The notes under the pieces: generated by a model | What the model saw: only the letters and a program-made list of their open reading frames with translations | Databases searched by the model: none | Told to the model about the DNA's origin: nothing | Position numbers and translations under genes: made by a program | Shown here: positions 342 through 24,135 of the stretch, one piece after another | How positions within the stretch are numbered: the first letter of the stretch is position 1 | Layout: each line of letters begins with the position of its first letter | Assembly: GCA_002269645.1 (NCBI GenBank) | Contig: NIVC01000225.1 | Coordinates: 710,927 to 774,926 of the forward strand | Direction of reading: 5' to 3' | Length of the DNA: 64,000 bases | Source: Macrostomum lignano | Taxonomy: Eukaryota

Positions 342-974
342 TCAAAGATGATCTGTCCCAGTGAACTTGGCCTCCTTAATGTCGTCACGGTTGAGGAAGG
401 CGGCGATTTTCTCGCGACCGCCAAAAGCTTCGTAGAACGCCTTGACAGAGGGCAGACTGTCGGTGCAGCTGGGGCTCAGAGCCACCAGAGCCAGCAGCAG
501 GTCGAAGAAAATGTAATCAACAAGGGTAATCTTGCCAAGCAACAGGTGAGTCTTGTCCTCCTGACTCGCCAGCTGCTTCTCAAACGGTTCCAGTAGGGCT
601 GGAACAGACTCTAGAAACGGCTGCTTGCCAGCGTCATAGTTTTCGTAGATCATTCGCAAAAACTTCGTTCGAATGTCGATTGTCTGATCAATCCACATTT
701 CAATTTGGGCCTGCTCGATGTTGTTGCTACCCATTAGGCCGTGCTCGCGGCCAAGGTAGCGAGCGATGGTGTGAGACTGAGATATTTTAGTCTTGCCATT
801 GATCGTGAGCACTGGCAGCTGGCCAAATGGCATTGTAGGCTTCACTTCAGCCCAGGTGTCCTTAGTGATTAAGTTAAACTTGTACTCAATACACTGGTCC
901 TCCAAGATCAGACGGATCATGTTGCCCAGGCCTTTCACTGGGAAATAGGTCAGCTCGTAGGTGTTGCTGGACAT
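342..974 (-). CDS. Glutathione S-transferase, Pi-class-like (copy 1), intronless, 210 aa
   Basis: Full ORF with N-terminal YFPVKG (catalytic Tyr), PFGQLP cis-Pro loop, SQSHTIARYLG motif and IYENYDAGK / PFEKQL / TLVDY C-domain motifs matching the GSTP-type fold as recalled. Confidence 0.93.
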   Translation of the reverse strand: MSSNTYELTYFPVKGLGNMIRLILEDQCIEYKFNLITKDTWAEVKPTMPFGQLPVLTINGKTKISQSHTIARYLGREHGLMGSNNIEQAQIEMWIDQTIDIRTKFLRMIYENYDAGKQPFLESVPALLEPFEKQLASQEDKTHLLLGKITLVDYIFFDLLLALVALSPSCTDSLPSVKAFYEAFGGREKIAAFLNRDDIKEAKFTGTDHL

Positions 975-2805
975 TGCGGCTGCGGGTTTGCAATAATTTT
1001 GTGTTCACTTTATATGCTGGAATTGAATGCGGTTTTTAAAATGTGGTGCACTATAACTAAAACGACACCACAGTCAAAGTTCACGTCTACACACTTATGG
1101 TTACCTGGATCATGTTCTCACAATTTTTTGATATTGTTTCCTATATAGGCTAATACCGCAATATCTGTCAGGATAAAACCATTGACAAAAAGCCTGTGAA
1201 AACTTACAAGAATGAATGAAGATTTATATTAGGATACCGTTTGAGTAAAAGTTATAGCTCGCAGTTAATAAGTAGCTAGTTTAGAAATCGGCGGCTAGAG
1301 TGAGAGAGAGAGAATCTGCCATGAGTCTACCAGCTGCTATATATTTACGGACAACTGCAGTCTATCCACGTGGTTGAGGTGGGTTTAGACGAGGTAATGA
1401 TCGATACACTGAATAAGCCTAATGCGCAGTTGGCATGCAGAGCTTACGACTCGTAGAAGAAACGAAACGACTTGGGACTTGAGTGGCCATTCCAATTCGC
1501 TACACAATTCATGATTGGCATAGCAGTTGGAAAGGCAGACATAGTCCATTGCAGCTGCAGCAGCTGGTTAGTCTAACGTATTTAATATTGAGCTGAGCGA
1601 ATGAACGCGGACCTGGATTTTTCAGAGCCCTGGTAAGTTGAGCTACCAGAGCATGCAGGGGATACGGCTACTCGATAATACTACCCTGGAGCAAAACTAG
1701 CTAGATTAAACTAGTCGCGAGTGGGGATCAAATCCAATACATGCCCAGAAGTATAAGACGCGCAATTAACAATTATGATTTGTACTTTTCTCTCTACAGC
1801 TAATTTGTGTTCCTCTGACATTATGTAAACATGTTTCTTGTCATCATTGAAATGTGTTCCAAATGAGAAAAATTACATTGTATATGGACTCTATGTCATT
1901 CCTTGGTTTCCCGTCCAGATGTTTAACTTAAGACGTCCACCCTATTCAGGTACTATCTCTCACGACCAGAGAGAGTTGATTAGATAGTAAGAAACCCACA
2001 CTTTGTAGAAAATAAAATGAGTCATTTAGCCTAAAAAGATTTTGACGGACAAGCAGACCCCGTACCGTCTCTAATCGAAAGCATACAACAACCTCCAAAA
2101 ACAGTCTAGCAGAGACCAACTTCTAGGTTGCTTTACGAAAAGACTTCACTGGTGGAAACTACACAAAATGATTACATAGTGTCACTATTACACGTATCTC
2201 CCTTGGCTTATCGTACAACACACGCTACACATTGTAATTCTAAAATCCTAGATCTGAAACTAATATCAATTAAATTGACAGACTAATGCTTTTACAATCG
2301 GATCGATTTTCTATTAAATTATCCATACCTAACACTTATTAATTGACTCGTAAACATTCTCATTCTCTAAGCTGCTTCAAACATAGAAATAAACAGCAAA
2401 CCACTCTACTAAGAAATAAGTAGAACTAAACGAGTTATATTTAATTACTAGAAATGGTGTGCAGTTTTTTCTGCAGATAGAATATTTTAACAAAATTTCT
2501 GCAACACAACGGTGAAGAAACGAAGTAATTCTAGCCAGAAAAATTGAATTGAATTTTAAACTAGAAGTGATGCCGTTTGCTTAACATATATATATATAAA
2601 ATGTTTAATCAAAAAGTATACGGAAAAGATGTTCTAAAAGCATTTAGATAAACAGACAACTGAATTGTACTAGGAAAATGTCACAGCTAGGGCTATAGAA
2701 GATGGAATGCTAACGATAGTAAACTACAAGGGTTGTTAGCTCTCACATCAGTCATATAGTTTCAATTTCAATTCCACACTGGTTTCCAAGAACAATCGAG
2801 CAAAT

Positions 2806-3432
2806 TTAAACATGCATCGATCCGGTGAACTTCATCGACTTGATCTCTGGCTTTTCCAGGAAAGCGTGCAGATTCTTCCTGGCACCGAAGCTGGTGTAGA
2901 ACGCTTTGACGTGGGGCGAGCTGTCCAGACAGGTCGGGCTCAGAGCGGTGAGCACGAGGAGCACATCGAACACGATGTAGTCAGCCAGGGTCAGCTTGCC
3001 AAACAGCAGGTGAGCACTGTCTCCAGTCAGCTGCTTCTCAAATGGCACCAGCTGGGCTGGAATAGAGTCGATAAACGGCTGCTTGCCGGCCTCATAATTT
3101 TCGTAGATCATTCGCAAAAACTTCGTTCGAATGTCGATTGTCTGATCGATCCACATTTCAATTTGGGCCTGCTCGATGTTGTTGCTACCCATCAGGCCGT
3201 GCTCGCGGCCAAGGTAGCGAGCGATGGTGTGAGACTGAGATATTTTAGTCTTGCCATTGATCGTGAGCACTGGCAGCTGGCCAAATGGCGTTGTAGGCTT
3301 AAAGTCAGCCCAGGTGTCCTTAGTGATTAAGTTGAACTTGTACTTGATAGATTGGTCCTCCAAGATCAGACGGATCATGTTGCCCAGGCCTTTCACTGGG
3401 AAATAGGCCAACTCGTAGGTGTTGCTGGACAT
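2806..3432 (-). CDS. Glutathione S-transferase, Pi-class-like (copy 2), chimeric, 208 aa
   Basis: Same motifs. The N-terminal ~120 aa are nearly identical to copy 1; from PFEKQLTGDSAHLL onward it is nearly identical to copy 3. Confidence 0.93.
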   Translation of the reverse strand: MSSNTYELAYFPVKGLGNMIRLILEDQSIKYKFNLITKDTWADFKPTTPFGQLPVLTINGKTKISQSHTIARYLGREHGLMGSNNIEQAQIEMWIDQTIDIRTKFLRMIYENYEAGKQPFIDSIPAQLVPFEKQLTGDSAHLLFGKLTLADYIVFDVLLVLTALSPTCLDSSPHVKAFYTSFGARKNLHAFLEKPEIKSMKFTGSMHV

Positions 3433-4207
3433 TGCGGCTGCGGGTTTGCAAATATATATAAATATAATGGAAGAACTTCTACAGATGTTTTCTATGTCTG
3501 TATGCTAAGTAAAGCGTAGCTGGGGATCAAGGGGGGGCTTGAAAAGTGTTGAAAGGAGTCAACAGAAATGGTCGGCCAATTGTTGTGGACATCCGGCATG
3601 ACTTTTGTCTAGTTTTTAGGTGGCTTCATGGGATGGTTGGTGCACTTTTGAAAACCAGAAATCGACACCACAATCAAAGTTGGCGTCTAAAGTTTTATCG
3701 AGACTAAACTTGAGTAGATGCCTGGATCATGGTCTCAAATTTCTGCTTTTGTTTCCTACATTGACTATACCTCAATATATCTCAGGGTGGCACCATTGAA
3801 AACTCTATCCAATAATAAAAACGCTAGTGAAAACTTACAAGAATAAAGACTTATTCAAATACCGTCTATGTAAAAGTTAAAGAATTAGTGATAATAACCA
3901 GACAAATGAACTGAATCTTAAACCGGATATGATGCCGCATGCTTAAAATATGTATATAGTGTTGATTATAAAACGATACAAACTAAAATTGTTTATAAAT
4001 GTTTATAAATAATGTAAATGTTTATAAATAAATAAACACACAACAGTTGTAATAATACAGCTAGAAAATAGTCATAATTAGGGTTATAGAAGATAGTAGA
4101 ATGCTAACGATAGTGAACTACAATAGTTATAAGCTCTCATATCAGCCGTATAGTTTCGATTTCAATTGCAGACTGTTTAAAAAACATCATTAATAATCCT
4201 AGCCCAT

Positions 4208-4831
4208 TTAAAGATGCGGCGATCCGGTGAACTTCATCGACTTGATCTCTGGCTTTTCCAGGAAAGCGTGCAGATTCTTCCTGGCACCGAAGCTGGTGTA
4301 GAACGCTTTGACGCGGGGCGAGCTGTCCAGACAGGTCGGGCTCAGAGCGGTGAGCACGTGAAGCACATCGAACACGATGTAGTCAGCCAGGGTCAGCTTG
4401 CCAAACAGCAGGTGAGCACTGTCTCCAGTCAGCTGCTTCTCAAACGGCGCCAATTCGGTCGGGATAGATTCAAGGAACGGCTTGAGTCCGTTCTCATAGT
4501 CGGTGTAGATCATTTTGGCGAATTTTTTGCGCAAATCGGCGCTCTGGTCGATCCACATTTCAATTTGGGCCTGCTCGATGTTGTTGCTACCCATCAGGCC
4601 GTGCTCGCGGCCAAGGTAGCGAGCGATGGTGTGAGACTGAGCAATCTGGGTCGATCCGTTAACAGTGAGCACTGGCACCTGGCCAAACGGTGTAGTCGGC
4701 TTTACCTGGGGCCAGTTCTCCCCTACCGGCTTGTACTCGTACGGGATGCCCTGATCCTCCAGGACAATGCGAACCATGTTACCGTAGCCCTTCACGGGAA
4801 AGTACATGAACTCGTATTTGTTGCCAGACAT
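4208..4831 (-). CDS. Glutathione S-transferase, Pi-class-like (copy 3), 207 aa
   Basis: The true start is most likely MSGNKYEFMYFPVKG (ATG at 4831), by alignment with the starts of copies 1 and 2. The 101-aa upstream extension in the ORF track is AT-rich and non-homologous. Confidence 0.92.
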   Translation of the reverse strand: MSGNKYEFMYFPVKGYGNMVRIVLEDQGIPYEYKPVGENWPQVKPTTPFGQVPVLTVNGSTQIAQSHTIARYLGREHGLMGSNNIEQAQIEMWIDQSADLRKKFAKMIYTDYENGLKPFLESIPTELAPFEKQLTGDSAHLLFGKLTLADYIVFDVLHVLTALSPTCLDSSPRVKAFYTSFGARKNLHAFLEKPEIKSMKFTGSPHL

Positions 4832-6949
4832 TTCTAGATAGCTTGTGTTCGTTAGTTTGTTTTGGTCTGAAATTGAAAGAAATGAAGAATAAAAAACTGT
4901 TGTGTAAACTTTCAAAATAAAGTATATTCTCATCAACATTAAAAAGGTCGCCGCCTTTGAGACTGCGCAGACTGCAAAGATTGGATGGATTGAAGCTCCC
5001 GCCCGGTTTTTCATTGCTTTGTTAAACCTTTTTTGAATATCAAAATGGTTGGCCAGGTGATAGACGCTAGTCGAAACACACTGCTCACTGGGACGACTTT
5101 TCAATGTTGCAGAGTATATATTAAACAATGTCATTTGTGATTAAACTGCCTGTAAAGAATTCAAAAGAGTTTCAAGAGTTCAAAAGGCCCTTTTAGGGCC
5201 AGTTGACGCTACTGCCAGTAGTATATGAACTATTGCTCAAATATTGGCCAGAACCGTTTTAAAAATCTGGTCTGAACCAACAATATATTGATTTGAACAT
5301 ACATTCACTAATGACATTGCTTAACTTAGTTATATTAATAAAACAAGTTTTAATAATGAATGTCTTAATATATTTGAAACTTACAATTAAATACAGTTGA
5401 GAAGAGCAGATCGCGATTACAGACAGAGAGTGGCAGGAGAATTGTTACACATGAGAAGGGTTTATATACAGTACAGAGAAGAAGGAAGGCTTCTATTAAC
5501 ACAACTGGATTTGCGGGGAGGTGAGTTGGATTGAACCGACCACCCACCTCTCTCCACCGTCGGGACCACACCCCATGCCCGTCCCCCTGGTTTAAACCAG
5601 TTGAGGCACGGAGAAAGTACACGGAATTTTGTAAGAAAAAACCACGACCGCGGGAGAGACTCTAGACCGGCTGTATAGCCACCTCAGAACGCCCAGCCAA
5701 TGAGATATTTGAGCATCAACAGACCCTCTATTCTCTGTACGGATAGGTAAATGAGTGTACCTAACCACACCCACCCATCCACATATACAACAGCCAACCT
5801 CTCCACTCCGTCTCTCATACAAACAACGTATAATCAACGTTGTTCTTGCGTAGAAAACAGGCAGACGCGTGAATGACACGCTGCTACTTGAATTAGCACT
5901 CAGTAACTCGCTTCAATTCAATCCAGGGCAAGAGTAAGACCCACCACAAGTCGTACGAACAATGCAAGCTTCCATTTAAAGAACTAATTCTACTTTTTTG
6001 TTAAGCTTTGATTATCGATTATTTCTATCGATTATCTTTACTTAACTGGTTAACAGCACAGTGGATGACAACAGACTAGCACACCCAGTCCCGTTTTTTG
6101 GGGCTTGCTTGAACTGAATGTATAGGCATAGAAGCATGGGGATGCAAGGGTTTTTTAGCTTCAAATTGAGCTTTGACTAGCAACCTGCGCCCCCCCCCGT
6201 TGGGGAGGCAACAAAGAAAGAAAGAATGTTGAGAATAAGTATGTAGGTTTTGACCTTGTACAGTCACTGATGTTAATCTTTAAGGGAAATGAATTTTAAA
6301 GCAAAAAATCACCAGCCCTGAAAGCCTAAGATATCAGCATCTGAACAACCCCCAATGAGAAATTTCAACAATGCCATCATGAGCATCGACATCTCAGAAA
6401 TTCCCCCCAAGCGTCGATTCTTTTCTGGTTGAATTCCTTCATCATAGCATTTCAGCAAATCCTCATGAGCTTTTACATTGAGCTTTACATTCAATTTGAG
6501 CCCTAAAAAACCAAGGTTTAAAATGTTTAAAAAACTTATTCATTCGAAAAAAAGTTTTCTCAAAATTATAAAATTTCGCAAAGTATAGCCTTCCAAACCT
6601 TATTATACTACTATAACAGGCAAGGTAAAAGTAGGCACATAAGAAAAAGCCAACAAGATAGAACAAAAAACTGAATTATCTGACCATGTTGACTTTACCA
6701 AACAAAACTGCTTTTACACATTTTCCGTTTTTCGTTTACACTATAAGTGAGAGTTGAAGTAACGCACAGTCACGCAAAAGTCTGTGACAAAGTTATCTTC
6801 TAAACAAATATGTCTTGGTCCAGTTACAGCAACGTGCAAGCCAGTTTAACGGCGTATTCGTAGATCATCGCAATATGCAACAATTCTTTACGGAATGTTG
6901 TTATTCTTCATCAAAGCATACCTACAATTTTCAACCCTGAAGCGAATAA

Positions 6950-7515
6950 GCACAGTAGCCTCAAACCATGAAGCAACTAAGGACAGTAGCCTCATACCCT
7001 GAAGCAACTAAGGACAGTAGCCTCATACCCTGAAGCAACTAAGGACAGTAACCTTATACCCTGAAGCAACTAAGGACAGTAGCCTCATACCATGAAGCGA
7101 TTTATGACAGTAACCTCATACCCTGAAGCGATTTATCACAGTAGCCTCATACCATGAAGCGATTTATGACAGTAACCTCATACCCTGAAGCGATTTATCA
7201 CAGTAGCCTCATACCCTGAAGCGATTTATGACAGTAACCTCATACCCTGAAGCGATTTATGACAGTAACCTCATACCCTGAAGCAACCAAGGACAGTAGC
7301 CTCATACCCTAAAGCGATTAAAGACAGTAGCCTCATACCCTGAAGCAACTAAGGACAGTAGCCTCATACCCTGAAGCGATTAAGGACAGAAGCCTCACAC
7401 CCTGAAGCGATTAAGGACAGAAGCCTCACACCCTGAAGCAACTAAGGACAGTAGCCTCACACCCTGAAGCAACTAAGGACAGTAGCCTCATACCCTGAAG
7501 CGATTAAGGACAGAA
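6950..7515. repeat. Minisatellite, 31-bp unit (AAGGACAGTAGCCTCATACCCTGAAGCAACT), about 18 copies
   Basis: Direct tandem repeats with unit variants (CAACT / CGATT). Confidence 0.95.
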
Positions 7516-7979
7516 GCGATATCATTGCAGAAAATCCAGCTAAACAAGTTTTTGATAAGCTTATTCATGTTAACTAGGAGTAGATTTGACACAGCTGATT
7601 AGTAGCAGAATTTGCAAAGTTAAGACAAACTGACACGGATACCACAAGCTTTAATGAAATGAATTCATAGTTTAAACAGATTAATAAACACAGGGTTTTG
7701 TGTCCGTGTGAAATGAGGTCCTGTCTTATCTTCAACCAATTTCACATTATACTTATACTGTAAATAAAAACAATACCTGTGTTCAGTATCAATCAAAACA
7801 TGTGCCAAGAAAAACGGTGGGTGGTCGAAAGTTAATGCAACATATCATAGATCAATTATTGTATTTAATATCATAATTTTAAATTCAAACAAAAGTGCAG
7901 GATAAGGCATTGAGGATACTATACTATAATTGGCTTGGCCAAAATCCTGATGCAATGAAGCGCGATTAATGACAGTAGG

Positions 7980-9285
7980 CTTGGAGGGGAATTGCTGAGA
8001 TGTCAAGGCTTATGGGGTAATCGCTGAGATTTTAAGGCTTGGGAATTGGTTAGATTTCAAGGCTTACAGGGGGAATTGCTGAGATTTCAAGGCTTACAGG
8101 GGGAATTGCTGAGATTTCAAGGCTTACAGGGGGAATTGCTGAGATGTCAAGGCTTACAGGGGAATTGCTGAGATGTCAAGGCTTACAGGGGAATTGCTGA
8201 AATTTCAAGGCTTACAGGGCGAATTGGTTAGATTTCAAGGCTTACAGGGGGAATTGCTGAGATGTCAAGGCTTGCAGGGGAATTGCTGAGATTTCAAGGC
8301 TTACAGGGGGAATTGCTGAGATTTCAAGGCTTACAGGGGGAATTGGTGAGAGTTCAAGGCTTACAGGGCGAATTGGTGAGATTTCAAGGCTTACAGGGGG
8401 AATTGCTGAGATTTCAAGGCTTACAGGGCGAATTGCTGAGATTTCAAGGCTTACAGGGCGAATTGGTGAGATTTCAAGGCTTACAGGGCGAATTGGTTAG
8501 ATTTCAAGGCTTACAGGGGGAATTGCTGAGATTTCAAGGCTTACAGGGCGAATTGGTGAGATTTCAAGGCTTACAGGGCGAATTGGTTAGATTTCAAGGC
8601 TTACAGGGGGAATTGCTGAGATGTCAAGGCTTACAGGGGAATTGCTGAAATTTCAAGGCTTACAGGGCGAATTGGTTAGATTTCAAGGCTTACAGGGGGA
8701 ATTGCTGAGATGTCAAGGCTTGCAGGGGGAATTGCTGAGATGTCAAGGCTTGCAGGGGAATTGCTGAGATTTCAAGGCTTACAGGGGGAATTGCTGAGAT
8801 TTCAAGGCTTACAGGGGGAATTGCTGAGATGTCAAGGCTTGCAGGGGAATTGCTGAGATTTCAAGGCTTACAGGGGGAATTGCTGAGATTTCAAGGCTTA
8901 CAGGGGGAATTGGTGAGAGTTCAAGGCTTACAGGGCGAATTGGTGAGATTTCAAGGCTTACAGGGGGAATTGGTGAGAGTTCAAGGCTTACAGGGCGAAT
9001 TGGTGAGATTTCAAGGCTTACAGGGGGAATTGCTGAGATTTCAAGGCTTACAGGGCGAATTGCTGAGATTTCAAGGCTTACAGGGCGAATTGCTGAGATT
9101 TCAAGGCTTACAGGGCGAATTGCTGAGATTTCAAGGCTTACAGGGCGAATTGGTGAGATTTCAAGGCTTACAGGGCGAATTGGTGAGATTTCAAGGCTTA
9201 CAGGGGGAATTGCTGAGATTTCAAGGCTTGGGAATTGCTGAAATGTCAAAGCTTACAAGAGGAATTGCTGAGATTTCAAGGCCAA
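7980..9285. repeat. Minisatellite, 30-bp unit (GAATTGCTGAGATTTCAAGGCTTACAGGGG), about 43 copies
   Basis: Direct tandem repeat; explains the LLRFQGLQGE-type ORFs at 8262-9299. Confidence 0.97.

Positions 9286-19036: not shown

Positions 19037-24135
<5,099 letters not shown>

What the first reader, a model, noticed from the sequence alone, without database searches (positions are those of the whole stretch)
342..4831. Anti-Lepore-type chimeric GST: the middle gene is copy-1 5' half fused to copy-3 3' half
Seen: GST2 matches GST1 through ..IYENY(E/D)AGKQPF and matches GST3 from PFEKQLTGDSAHLL to the end, with the switch at about 3030-3080. The flanks agree: GST2 upstream (3655-3880) aligns with GST1 upstream (1050-1265), and GST2 downstream (2510-2805) aligns with GST3 downstream (3880-4207). 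In transcription order GST3 - hybrid - GST1, this is the product expected from unequal crossing-over between a GST3-GST1 pair, as in anti-Lepore globins (established mechanism). Inference: the hybrid pairs one paralogue's glutathione-binding N-domain with the other's C-terminal helices, which shape the hydrophobic substrate site, and so could have a new specificity.
Basis: partly seen in the sequence, partly recalled or inferred. Interest (0 to 1): 0.72.

Follow-up and report, generated by a model that had tools for sequence, protein, structure and literature searches.

The report
Chimeric middle GST in flatworm cluster
The middle of three tandem detoxification-enzyme (pi-class GST) genes of the flatworm Macrostomum lignano really is a front-of-one, back-of-the-other chimera made by an old unequal exchange, but much of its near-identity to its neighbours comes from later gene conversion; it is a clean but ordinary example.

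Summary
G2 (2806-3432, minus strand) groups with G1 (342-974) over nt 1-360 and with G3 (4208-4831) from nt 391 to the end, each with 100% bootstrap. The maximum chi-square breakpoint lies at nt 382/386|387 (window ~3046-3051), permutation p<0.0005. Both flanks are homologous as described (z 30-59).

The flanks are chimeric right up to the coding ends and both parents remain, so an anti-Lepore-type unequal exchange between G3 and G1 is the best origin. It is old, however: flank K2P is 0.19-0.27, against 0.01-0.05 between three assembled copies of the locus, all of which carry the chimera.

The near-identity of the coding halves is younger than the flanks, which points to interlocus gene conversion:
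- The 3' tract differs at 3 of 221 nt in the window.
- G2 and G3 share locus-specific polymorphisms.
- A 99-nt tract is almost identical in all three genes.

The junction lies inside helix alpha5, not at the domain boundary. The substrate-site positions that differ between the parents all fall in the G1-derived part, so a new specificity is not indicated.

The organism is Macrostomum lignano. A fourth GST lies just outside the window. I rate this a new member of a known kind, of modest interest.

The parts
342..974 (-). G1, pi-class GST, 210 aa; the downstream parent (last of the three in transcription order)
   Evidence: Intact ORF. Pfam GST_N and GST_C. It groups with an outgroup G1-type cDNA in both halves.
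2806..3432 (-). G2, the chimeric pi-class GST, 208 aa
   Evidence: Intact ORF. Best solved-structure match is GSTP1, E=4.5e-40. Mosaic shown. Between loci dN is 0.004-0.010 and dS 0.068-0.084.
4208..4831 (-). G3, pi-class GST, 207 aa; the upstream parent
   Evidence: It groups with an outgroup G3-type cDNA (100% bootstrap).
3073..3451 (-). G1-like 5' tract of G2 (19 nt upstream of the ATG to nt 360); counterpart in G1 is 615-993
   Evidence: 16 differences in 379 nt. G1+G2 bootstrap 100%.
3142..3240 (-). 99-nt tract (G2 nt 193-291, aa 65-97) almost identical in all three genes; counterparts are 684-782 (G1) and 4544-4642 (G3)
   Evidence: 2 to 4 differences among the three window genes, against about 20 to G0 and about 35% G1-G3 divergence elsewhere. 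G1+G2+G3 cluster to the exclusion of both outgroup orthologues, 85% bootstrap.
3043..3072 (-). Junction zone (G2 nt 361-390, aa 121-130, helix alpha5): diverged from both parents, weakly G1-affiliated
   Evidence: 9/30 differences to G1 and 11/30 to G3. Four fixed G2-unique substitutions. G1+G2 bootstrap 73%. Predicted helix alpha5 spans aa 113-135.
3028..3045 (-). 18-nt island (CCGTTTGAGAAGCAGCTG, encoding PFEKQL) identical between G1 (570-587) and G3 (4430-4447); the likely site of the original exchange
   Evidence: It is the third-longest exact G1/G3 match; the two longer runs both lie in the 99-nt tract. It sits immediately 3' of the last G1-specific site.
2822..3042 (-). G3-like 3' tract of G2 (nt 391-611); counterpart in G3 is 4224-4444; a recent conversion tract
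   Evidence: 3 differences in 221 nt. Synonymous third positions differ at 1/72, against 59/260 in the adjoining flank, p=3e-6. Shared polymorphisms at alignment columns 537 and 606.
2806..2821 (-). Last 16 nt of G2, already flank-like in divergence from G3
   Evidence: 3/16 differences to G3 4208-4223. Three fixed G2-unique sites.
2524..2784 (-). G2 downstream flank, homologous to the G3 downstream flank 3887-4178
   Evidence: 77% identity over 260 aligned nt, K2P 0.27, z=30. Present in all three loci.
3659..3882 (-). G2 upstream flank, homologous to the G1 upstream flank 1059-1257
   Evidence: 80% identity, K2P 0.23, z=30.
1258..2524 (.). 1.27-kb segment of the G2-G1 spacer with no counterpart in the G3-G2 spacer (an insertion here or a deletion there)
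   Evidence: No other copy in the window. Present at 98% identity in L002 and L003.
3452..3658 (.). About 200-nt segment next to the G2 start with no counterpart upstream of G1

Best explanation
G2 is a functional chimeric pi-class glutathione S-transferase. It was created once, in the Macrostomum lignano lineage, by an unequal (non-allelic) exchange between the coding sequences of two already very divergent tandem paralogues, G3 (upstream) and G1 (downstream).

The exchange duplicated one period of the array: the G3 3' part, the spacer and the G1 5' part. This gave the order G3, chimera, G1. The exchange point most likely lay at or next to the 18-nt island of G1/G3 identity that encodes PFEKQL (G2 nt 388-405), which sits in helix alpha5.

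The event is old. Afterwards the similarity it had set up channelled interlocus gene conversion: G2 with G3 over nt 391-611 (recent and recurrent), G2 with G1 over the 5' 360 nt (less recent), and all three genes over nt 193-291.

The junction zone and the extreme 3' end lie at the edges of these tracts. They escaped conversion and have flank-like divergence.

Shown: the mosaic, the flank homology, the age difference between flanks and tracts, and the presence of the chimera in three loci. Inferred: the exact exchange point, the type of exchange (meiotic crossing-over, sister-chromatid exchange or template switching), and the idea that homology limits shaped the tract ends.
For: - Mosaic and breakpoint.
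- Flanks: chimeric up to the coding boundaries. The G2 and G1 upstream regions are identical for 19 nt before the ATG and then 80-83% identical (z 30-59). The G2 and G3 downstream regions are 77-79% identical (z 30-46) from about 21-29 nt after the stop. Control pairs give z<2.
- Spacers: the two spacers are homologous along their length apart from two indels, as expected if one period was duplicated.
- Neutral rates are comparable: between loci, flank K is 0.009-0.047 (one 0.13 outlier: the G3 downstream flank of L002 carries a replaced segment) and dS is 0.007-0.084.
- Flank age: paralogue flank K2P is 0.19-0.27.
- 3' tract: 3, 5 and 14 differences in 222 nt, with synonymous third positions 1/72, 3/72 and 5/68 against a flank of about 22% (p=3e-6 to 8e-3).
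- 5' tract: 4-fold sites differ at 0-2 of 17-27 per segment, against a flank of 17-20%.
- Concerted evolution: in the 3' tract G2_W differs from G3_W at 3 sites and from G2_L2 at 7. Columns 537 and 606 co-vary between G2 and G3 within a locus. G2 of L002 carries a G1-like patch at columns 492-494.
- Central tract: nt 193-291 differs at 0-4 sites among all nine genes, and the three paralogues cluster to the exclusion of both outgroup orthologues.
- Islands: the junction plus the 3' tail hold 7 of the 13 fixed G2-unique substitutions in 43 nt (p=6e-6). Junction divergence from G1 (7-9 of 30) matches the flank divergence.
- G2 is intact in three loci with dN/dS about 0.06-0.12.
- It is annotated from transcripts as BOX15_Mlig001320g2.
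Against: - No 2-gene (G3-G1) haplotype or species was available to show the ancestral state.
- The 18-nt identity island is short for classical homologous crossing-over, so the exchange may have been microhomology-mediated or replication-based rather than meiotic crossing-over.
- The first 21-29 nt after the stop codons align poorly and include an 8-nt indel.
- For the first 189 nt, the NG86 dS (0.12-0.20) is not clearly below the flank K, so conversion on the 5' side rests mainly on 4-fold sites and on nt 190-360.
- The three loci are not independent samples. They are redundant copies, homeologues or alleles within one inbred line's assembly.
Confidence: 0.75

Rival explanations
1. Conversion-only mosaic. 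G2 began as an ordinary whole-gene tandem duplicate of G1 (or of G3). Its other half was later overwritten by gene conversion from the other neighbour, with no intragenic unequal exchange.
For: Gene conversion is clearly active in this cluster: the 99-nt tract shared by all three genes, the locus-specific shared polymorphisms and the G1-like micro-patch in G2 of L002. The coding tracts are younger than the flanks. The globin literature warns that the same chimeric pattern can arise from conversion (PMC4041002).
Against: - The G2 flanks are themselves chimeric up to the coding ends.
- G1 and G3 flanks share no detectable homology (z<2), so a conversion tract could not have run about 300 nt into a non-homologous flank.
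- The flank is also much more diverged than the coding tract, so the two were not copied in one event.
- A whole-gene duplication would need both breakpoints within about 25 nt of two stop codons (or two start codons) by chance.
- Conversion of a 65%-identical half is mechanistically unlikely.
Confidence: 0.13
2. One reading: a single, fairly recent unequal crossing-over and nothing else. On this view the present identity profile is the direct footprint of that one event.
For: The clean two-block mosaic and the correct array order. For the first 189 nt, dS (0.12-0.20) is close to the flank K.
Against: - Flanks are 17-23% diverged, whereas the 3' tract is 1.4% diverged (window) with 1/72 synonymous third positions changed.
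- The chimera is present in three loci that are 3-4% diverged. Within a locus, G2-G3 distance in the 3' tract is equal to or below between-locus distances.
- Identity drops abruptly at nt ~612 and at -20 from the ATG.
- G1 and G3 are nearly identical over nt 193-291.
Confidence: 0.07
3. Assembly or annotation artefact. The middle gene is a chimeric mis-assembly of reads from G1 and G3 in a highly repetitive, redundantly assembled genome.
For: The Mlig_3_7 assembly is redundant and repeat-rich (PMC5730564). Several gene models at this locus are wrongly joined (P0023, P0024, P0025).
Against: Three separate contigs carry the same G3-G2-G1 structure, each with its own substitutions. G2 has 13 fixed substitutions found in neither parent. 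UniRef models that appear to derive from another M. lignano gene set contain the same G2 sequence. The spacers are unique sequence.
Confidence: 0.02

Closest known systems
Anti-Lepore haemoglobin duplications and the chimeric HBB/HBD fusion genes of mammals (Gaudry et al. 2014, PMC4041002)
   Same: - The three-gene product is upstream parent, chimera, downstream parent.
- The chimera has the 5' part and 5' flank of the downstream gene and the 3' part and 3' flank of the upstream gene.
- Coding sequence is later blurred by interparalogue gene conversion, while the flanks keep the duplication history.
- As in Canoidea, both parents are retained intact.
   Different: - The genes are intronless, so there is no intron 2 to use as a marker.
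- The parents were already saturated at synonymous sites (dS>1), so the exchange used only a very short identity island.
- By their shared locus-tag prefix, the genes appear to sit in one trans-spliced transcriptional unit, so promoter inheritance, which is central in globins, probably matters little.
- Conversion now acts separately on the two halves, each with a different partner.
Pi-class glutathione S-transferases (mammalian GSTP1; Onchocerca volvulus GST2, PDB 1tu7)
   Same: - Best solved-structure matches: GSTP1 E=4.5e-40 and 1tu7 E=3e-36.
- Catalytic Tyr (Y10 aligned to GSTP1 Y7).
- The Q-S glutathione-binding pair (Q66 and S67 aligned to Q64 and S65).
- An aromatic 'key' residue (F50 aligned to Y49).
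- A confidently predicted canonical two-domain fold (pLDDT 93).
   Different: Only about 35-40% identical. The GSTP1 R13 position is Leu in G1 and G2 and Tyr in G3. No enzymatic data exist for these proteins.
Concerted evolution of tandem detoxification or multigene clusters by interlocus gene conversion (general reviews PMC3924818, PMC3924832)
   Same: Short tracts of a few hundred nt, confined to coding sequence, with sharp ends. Paralogues within a genome copy are as similar as orthologous copies. Polymorphisms are shared between paralogues.
   Different: Here the recipient is a chimera, so its two halves are kept similar to two different donors. A third tract unites all three genes.

Membership tests
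Pi-class GST | GST N-terminal (thioredoxin-like) and C-terminal helical domains | tested here: met
   Pfam GST_N/GST_N_3 and GST_C/GST_C_3 are above cut-off in all three proteins. The predicted fold is beta-alpha-beta-alpha-beta-beta-alpha followed by helices alpha4-alpha8, pLDDT 93.3.
Pi-class GST | Closer to pi than to sigma, mu or alpha class representatives | tested here: met
   PDB search: GSTP1 entries E 4.5e-40 to 1e-37, sigma 5e-28, mu 1e-26 or weaker.
Pi-class GST | Catalytic tyrosine and glutathione-site residues (GSTP1 Y7, W38, K44, Q51-L52, Q64-S65; list recalled from the GSTP1 literature) | tested here: met
   In the alignment the G2 residues Y10, W41, K45, Q52-L53 and Q66-S67 occupy these positions. 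Y10, W41, Q52, Q66 and S67 are invariant across the 19 homologues.
Pi-class GST | Glutathione-conjugating activity | not testable with these tools
   Needs recombinant enzyme assays.
Anti-Lepore-type duplication product (unequal exchange between tandem paralogues) | Array order is upstream parent, chimera, downstream parent, with both parents present | tested here: met
   In transcription order: G3 (4831-4208), G2 (3432-2806), G1 (974-342). The order is the same in L002 and L003.
Anti-Lepore-type duplication product (unequal exchange between tandem paralogues) | Chimera has the 5' part of the downstream parent and the 3' part of the upstream parent, with a single switch | tested here: met
   Maximum chi-square 132-154, p<0.0005, one breakpoint at nt 382/386|387. 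Partitioned trees give 100% bootstrap on each side.
Anti-Lepore-type duplication product (unequal exchange between tandem paralogues) | 5' flank matches the downstream parent and 3' flank matches the upstream parent, up to the gene ends; the two spacers are homologous to each other | tested here: met
   z 30-59 for the expected pairs and <2 for the G1/G3 controls (G2 against G3 upstream gives z about 4-5 from one short shared motif). There are 19 identical nt before the ATG. Two indels (1.27 kb and about 0.2 kb) interrupt the spacers.
Anti-Lepore-type duplication product (unequal exchange between tandem paralogues) | Coding halves and flanks have the same age (if nothing happened afterwards) | tested here: not met
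   Flank K2P is 0.19-0.27. In the 3' tract synonymous third positions differ at 1-7%; in the 5' tract 4-fold sites differ at 0-2 of 17-27 per segment. A later conversion overlay explains this. It lowers 'single recent event', not 'origin by unequal exchange'.
Anti-Lepore-type duplication product (unequal exchange between tandem paralogues) | An ancestral 2-copy arrangement exists in a relative or another haplotype | not testable with these tools
   All three assembled loci have three copies plus G0. The outgroup sequences available are about 1-kb cDNAs whose UTRs do not align. No other Macrostomum genome could be searched.
Interlocus (ectopic) gene conversion / concerted evolution | Tract identity far above that of adjoining homologous sequence, with sharp boundaries | tested here: met
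   The 3' tract has 3/221 differences, against 3/16 in the last 16 nt and 59/260 in the flank. The 99-nt tract has 2-4 differences in the window (0-4 across all nine genes), against about 35% G1-G3 divergence on both sides.
Interlocus (ectopic) gene conversion / concerted evolution | Paralogues within one genome copy are as close as, or closer than, the same gene in different copies; polymorphisms are shared | tested here: met
   This holds for the 3' tract and the central tract (G1+G2+G3 85%). It does not hold for the 5' tract, where G1 and G2 differ by 13-16 sites against 2-11 between loci.

The most novel reading that the evidence does not exclude
The chimera may be more than a by-product. 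Because its two halves each stay convertible with a different, otherwise mutually unconvertible parent, G2 could act as a standing bridge that passes variants between G1 and G3. For example, G2-derived states now appear in G3 of the window and L003. With G1-type 'key' and alpha4 surfaces joined to G3-type alpha5-alpha8, it could also form heterodimers with both parents. The cluster of G2-specific substitutions at the alpha5 junction would then be compensatory or adaptive rather than merely unconverted.
Probability: 0.1. Interest if true: 0.5.

Novelty: new member of a known kind. Interest (0 to 1): 0.3.

Why it matters
Scientifically this is a tidy, well-resolved invertebrate example of a textbook process: unequal exchange creates a chimeric paralogue, and partitioned gene conversion follows. 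It occurs in a detoxification gene family of a flatworm that is increasingly used in toxicology and regeneration work. It shows that flanks, not coding identity, date such events.

There are practical consequences for anyone working on M. lignano GSTs:
- 5' probes, primers and dsRNAs will cross-hit G1 and G2, and 3' ones will cross-hit G2 and G3.
- The 99-nt core hits all three genes.
- Only the 30-nt junction and the 3' end are specific to G2.
- Several public gene models at this locus are wrongly fused.

It does not open a new kind of biology.

Tried and rejected
- A global alignment of the two spacers with cheap gap extension gave meaningless scattered blocks beyond the first ~280 nt. I replaced it with local pairwise alignments and shuffle controls.
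- The nine-sequence MAFFT alignments of the flanks inflated paralogue divergence to p about 0.3, because non-homologous sequences were forced in. I used pairwise values instead.
- I first misread the block labels and placed the junction at nt 301-345. The sliding window and residue counting corrected this.
- My early idea that the junction is 'equally distant from both parents, hence a remnant of an independent old gene' was dropped. Site by site it is interleaved and groups weakly with G1 (73%), with divergence like the flanks.
- An exact look-up of the G2 protein found nothing on record. The related loci were reached through G3 and G0 instead.
- I tested the 1.27-kb spacer segment as a possible transposon; there is no second copy in the window.
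- Outgroup cDNA UTRs do not align with M. lignano flanks, so they could not polarise the flank history.
- Literature searches for described chimeric GSTs or for M. lignano GST clusters found nothing specific.
- NG86 dS for nt 1-189 alone does not separate the 5' tract from the flank. The claim of conversion on the 5' side is therefore weaker than on the 3' side.

Full report
WHAT IS THERE

The first 5 kb of the window carry three intact, intronless reading frames on the minus strand: G1 342-974 (210 aa), G2 2806-3432 (208 aa) and G3 4208-4831 (207 aa). The mechanical G3 ORF runs on to 5134, but the Met at 4831 aligns with the other two starts. All three have GST N- and C-terminal domains. The best solved-structure relatives of G2 are pi-class enzymes: GSTP1 at E=4.5e-40 and Onchocerca GST2 at 3e-36, against sigma at 5e-28 and mu at 1e-26. 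No other GST lies in the remaining 59 kb.

The organism is the free-living flatworm Macrostomum lignano. The window belongs to a 775-kb contig of assembly GCA_002269645.1.

Two further contigs of the same assembly are collinear with the window at 96-97% identity: NIVC01002503.1 (L001/L002) and NIVC01000797.1 (L003). Both carry the same G3-G2-G1 array. They also show a fourth, more distant GST (G0, about 50% identical) 2.2-3.3 kb downstream of G1, just beyond the left edge of the window, followed by a Pex2/12 peroxin gene. The published description of this assembly states that it is redundant, with 180 Mb in blocks at least 95% identical, because the sequenced line has extra large chromosomes (PMC5730564). 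The three loci are therefore homeologous or allelic copies. I used them as replicates and as a yardstick for neutral divergence.

CHECK OF THE OBSERVATION

The mosaic is real and far beyond chance. In the window triplet there are 184 informative sites. To the left of G2 nt 382/387, 94 are G1-like and 10 G3-like. To the right, 1 is G1-like and 79 are G3-like. The maximum chi-square is 143.9 with permutation p<0.0005, and the other two loci give 154 and 132 at the same place.

I built NJ trees on partitions, using G0 and two outgroup cDNAs as references: L004 (G1-type) and L005 (G3-type), both from other, unidentified SRA samples. The results were:
- nt 1-192: G1+G2 100%.
- nt 292-360: G1+G2 100%.
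- nt 391-end: G2+G3 100%.

- G2 downstream 2524-2784 aligns with G3 downstream 3887-4178 (77% identity over 260 aligned nt, z=30 against shuffles).
- G2 upstream 3659-3882 aligns with G1 upstream 1059-1257 (80%, z=30).
- The 19 nt before the two ATGs are identical.
- Control pairs give z<2.

ORIGIN

The G3-G2 spacer (775 nt) and the G2-G1 spacer (1831 nt) are homologous to each other from end to end. The exceptions are a unique 1.27-kb segment in the latter (1258-2524) and an extra ~200 nt next to the G2 start (3452-3658). Homologous spacers only show that one period of the array was duplicated. What locates the breakpoints is that the G2 flanks are G1-type right up to the ATG and G3-type from within about 25 nt of the stop, while the flanks of G1 and G3 share no detectable homology.

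The two ends of the duplicated unit must therefore lie at equivalent positions inside the two coding sequences, which are the only stretch G1 and G3 have in common. That is an unequal homologous exchange. The order (upstream parent, chimera with downstream-parent 5' end, downstream parent) is that of the duplication, or anti-Lepore, product. This is the flank criterion used for the beta-globin chimeras (PMC4041002).

A conversion-only origin would need a tract running about 300 nt into non-homologous flank. It would also need conversion between halves that are only about 65% identical. I consider it unlikely (probability about 0.13).

The outgroup cDNAs have UTRs that do not align with any M. 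lignano flank. G1-type and G3-type lineages each have their own orthologue elsewhere. The parents are therefore ancient (dS>1). The unalignable UTRs suggest, but do not prove, that the chimera arose later, within the M. lignano lineage.

WHY ONE EVENT IS NOT THE WHOLE STORY

Between the three loci, flank divergence (K2P 0.009-0.047, apart from one 0.13 outlier where the G3 downstream flank of L002 carries a replaced segment) and synonymous divergence (dS 0.007-0.084) are similar. Flanks therefore do not evolve faster than silent sites.

Between paralogues the picture is uneven:

| Region | Divergence |
|---|---|
| G2-G3 downstream flanks | K2P 0.25-0.27 |
| G2-G1 upstream flanks | K2P 0.19-0.23 |
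| G2-G3 3' tract (nt 391-611) | 3, 5 and 14 differences in 221-222 nt in the three loci |
| 3' tract, synonymous third positions | 1/72, 3/72 and 5/68, against about 22% in the adjoining flank (p=3e-6, 1e-4, 8e-3) |

Identity collapses abruptly at both ends of that tract. There are 3 differences in the last 16 coding nt, followed by an 8-nt indel just after the stop.

Within the 3' tract, G2 and G3 of the same locus are as close as the same gene in different loci: G2_W differs from G3_W at 3 sites and from G2_L2 at 7. Only one codon (alignment columns 483 and 485, Leu against His) is a fixed difference. Columns 537 and 606 carry the same locus-specific alleles in both genes. G2 of L002 has a G1-like patch at columns 492-494. 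G3 of L002 keeps G1- or G0-like, presumably ancestral, states at columns 439 and 575, where G3 of the other two loci has the G2 state. This is recurrent interlocus gene conversion that continued after the three copies diverged.

On the 5' side the evidence is weaker but points the same way. At 4-fold sites there are 0-2 differences per 17-27 sites, against 17-20% in the flank. Synonymous third positions over nt 190-360 differ significantly from the flank (p 0.002-0.03). The NG86 dS of nt 1-189 (0.12-0.20), however, is not clearly below the flank K. G1 and G2 also remain separate clades there (13-16 differences against 2-11 between loci).

Finally, nt 193-291 (aa 65-97, the glutathione-binding Q-S motif and the start of alpha4) differ by only 0-4 nt among all nine genes, against about 20 to G0. 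The three paralogues cluster there to the exclusion of their own outgroup orthologues (85%). That is a third conversion tract.

THE JUNCTION

G2 nt 361-390 (window 3043-3072, aa 121-130) differs from G1 at 7-9 of 30 sites and from G3 at 10-13. It groups weakly with G1 (73%). It carries four substitutions that are fixed in G2 and found in neither parent. Together with the last 13-16 coding nt, it holds 7 of the 13 such substitutions (p=6e-6). Its divergence from G1 equals that of the flanks.

My reading, which is inference, is that these are islands at the edges of the conversion domains. Conversion with G1 cannot run past the point where homology to G1 ends, and likewise for G3, so the islands have aged since the original exchange.

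Immediately 3' of the island lies an 18-nt stretch (CCGTTTGAGAAGCAGCTG) that is identical in G1 and G3. It is the longest exact G1/G3 match outside the 99-nt tract and the most plausible site of the original exchange. Eighteen nt is short for classical crossing-over. The exchange may therefore have been microhomology-mediated or a replication template switch, either of which gives the same product. I cannot separate these possibilities.

FUNCTION

G2 is intact in all three loci, and its between-locus dN/dS is about 0.06-0.12. In the transcript-based annotation it is BOX15_Mlig001320g2, numbered with G3 (g1) and G1 (g3) under one shared prefix. According to the genome paper, that naming reflects precursor RNAs cut by spliced-leader trans-splicing (PMC5730564). 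The annotated mRNAs start directly after AG acceptors: 5 nt before the ATG in G1 and G2, and 35 nt before it in G3. G2 is therefore very probably an expressed, functional enzyme. This is inferred from the annotation, not from reads.

A confident model (pLDDT 93.3) places the N-domain at aa 6-77, alpha4 at 85-110 and alpha5 at 113-135. The junction is thus inside alpha5, not at the domain boundary. The G1-derived part comprises the whole glutathione-binding domain plus alpha4 and most of alpha5. The G3-derived part is the end of alpha5, alpha6-alpha8 and the C-terminal tail.

I mapped the GSTP1 substrate-site residues, a list recalled from the GSTP1 literature, through the alignment:
- The positions that differ between the parents are aa 16 (Leu in G1/G2, Tyr in G3), aa 38 (Lys, Glu) and aa 106 (Leu, Ala). 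All lie in the G1-derived part.
- The C-terminal Thr-Gly is the same in both parents.
The substrate pocket of G2 is therefore predicted to be essentially G1-type. If the chimera differs functionally, the alpha5 interface and the unique C-terminal tail (SMHV) are the places to look.

COMPARISON AND VERDICT

Mechanistically this is the GST counterpart of the anti-Lepore-type HBB/HBD chimeras with a later conversion overlay (PMC4041002). It is a member of the pi class by every sequence criterion tested. The one criterion of a simple anti-Lepore product that fails, equal age of halves and flanks, is explained by gene conversion. That failure lowers 'single recent event', not 'origin by unequal exchange'.

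I found no prior description of this cluster. It is a new member of a known kind, with modest interest (0.3). Nothing in this work required a referred step.

Noticed in passing
outside the window's left edge; L002 10001-10636 and L003 10001-10636: A fourth pi-like GST (G0 = P0009, about 50% identical to G1) lies 2.15-3.3 kb downstream of G1, followed by a Pex2/Pex12 RING peroxin gene and an amino-acid transporter gene. The cluster is therefore at least four genes, and the window cuts it.
   Followed up: partly
window 6934-7517 and 7986-9282; also 19267-20035, 20722-21747, 22599-23662 and many more: The window is packed with minisatellites and microsatellites: 31-bp x19, 30-bp x44, 45-bp x17, AATAG x205, AGAT x221 and about 25 further arrays. 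The 30-bp array upstream of G3 has about 44 copies here but only about 11 in L001 (6608-6940), so copy number varies between the assembled copies.
   Followed up: partly
L003 3595-6704; proteins P0023, P0024, P0025: Public gene models at this locus are mis-joined. P0025 splices the G2 5' end to the G1 3' end across about 2.5 kb. UniRef A0A1I8HV54 (620 aa) fuses three GSTs into one protein and A0A1I8J9W7 (411 aa) fuses two. The near-identical tracts probably mislead transcript assembly and mapping.
   Followed up: partly
window ~4867-4872 (upstream of G3), 3438-3444 (G2), 980-986 (G1), minus strand: Annotated mRNAs begin directly after AG acceptors: TTTCAG 35 nt before the G3 ATG, and CCCGCAG 5 nt before the G1 and G2 ATGs. 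The three genes share one locus-tag prefix (Mlig001320g1-g3). This suggests a polycistronic precursor resolved by spliced-leader trans-splicing. The 101 codons upstream of the G3 Met in the mechanical ORF (4832-5134) are probably not coding.
   Followed up: partly
window about 4884-4922 (53-91 nt upstream of the G3 ATG) against about 3811-3848 (G2 upstream) and about 1194-1216 (G1 upstream): A short 21-37 nt similarity links the G3 upstream region to the G1/G2 upstream homology block (z about 4-5 in all three loci for G2 against G3). The G1/G2 version contains GTAAGT. It could be a shared regulatory or splice-related element, or chance.
   Followed up: no
window 1258-2524: A 1.27-kb unique segment in the G2-G1 spacer has no counterpart in the G3-G2 spacer, no second copy in the window and only short ORFs. 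It is conserved at 98% in the other two loci. Its origin (an insertion here or a deletion in the other spacer) is unknown.
   Followed up: partly
L002 about 5239-5242 (G2 of that locus, alignment columns 492-495): A 3-4 nt patch in the G3-like half of G2 carries the G1 state (GGT), changing Thr to Val as in G1. This looks like a micro-conversion from G1 into the 'wrong' half.
   Followed up: no
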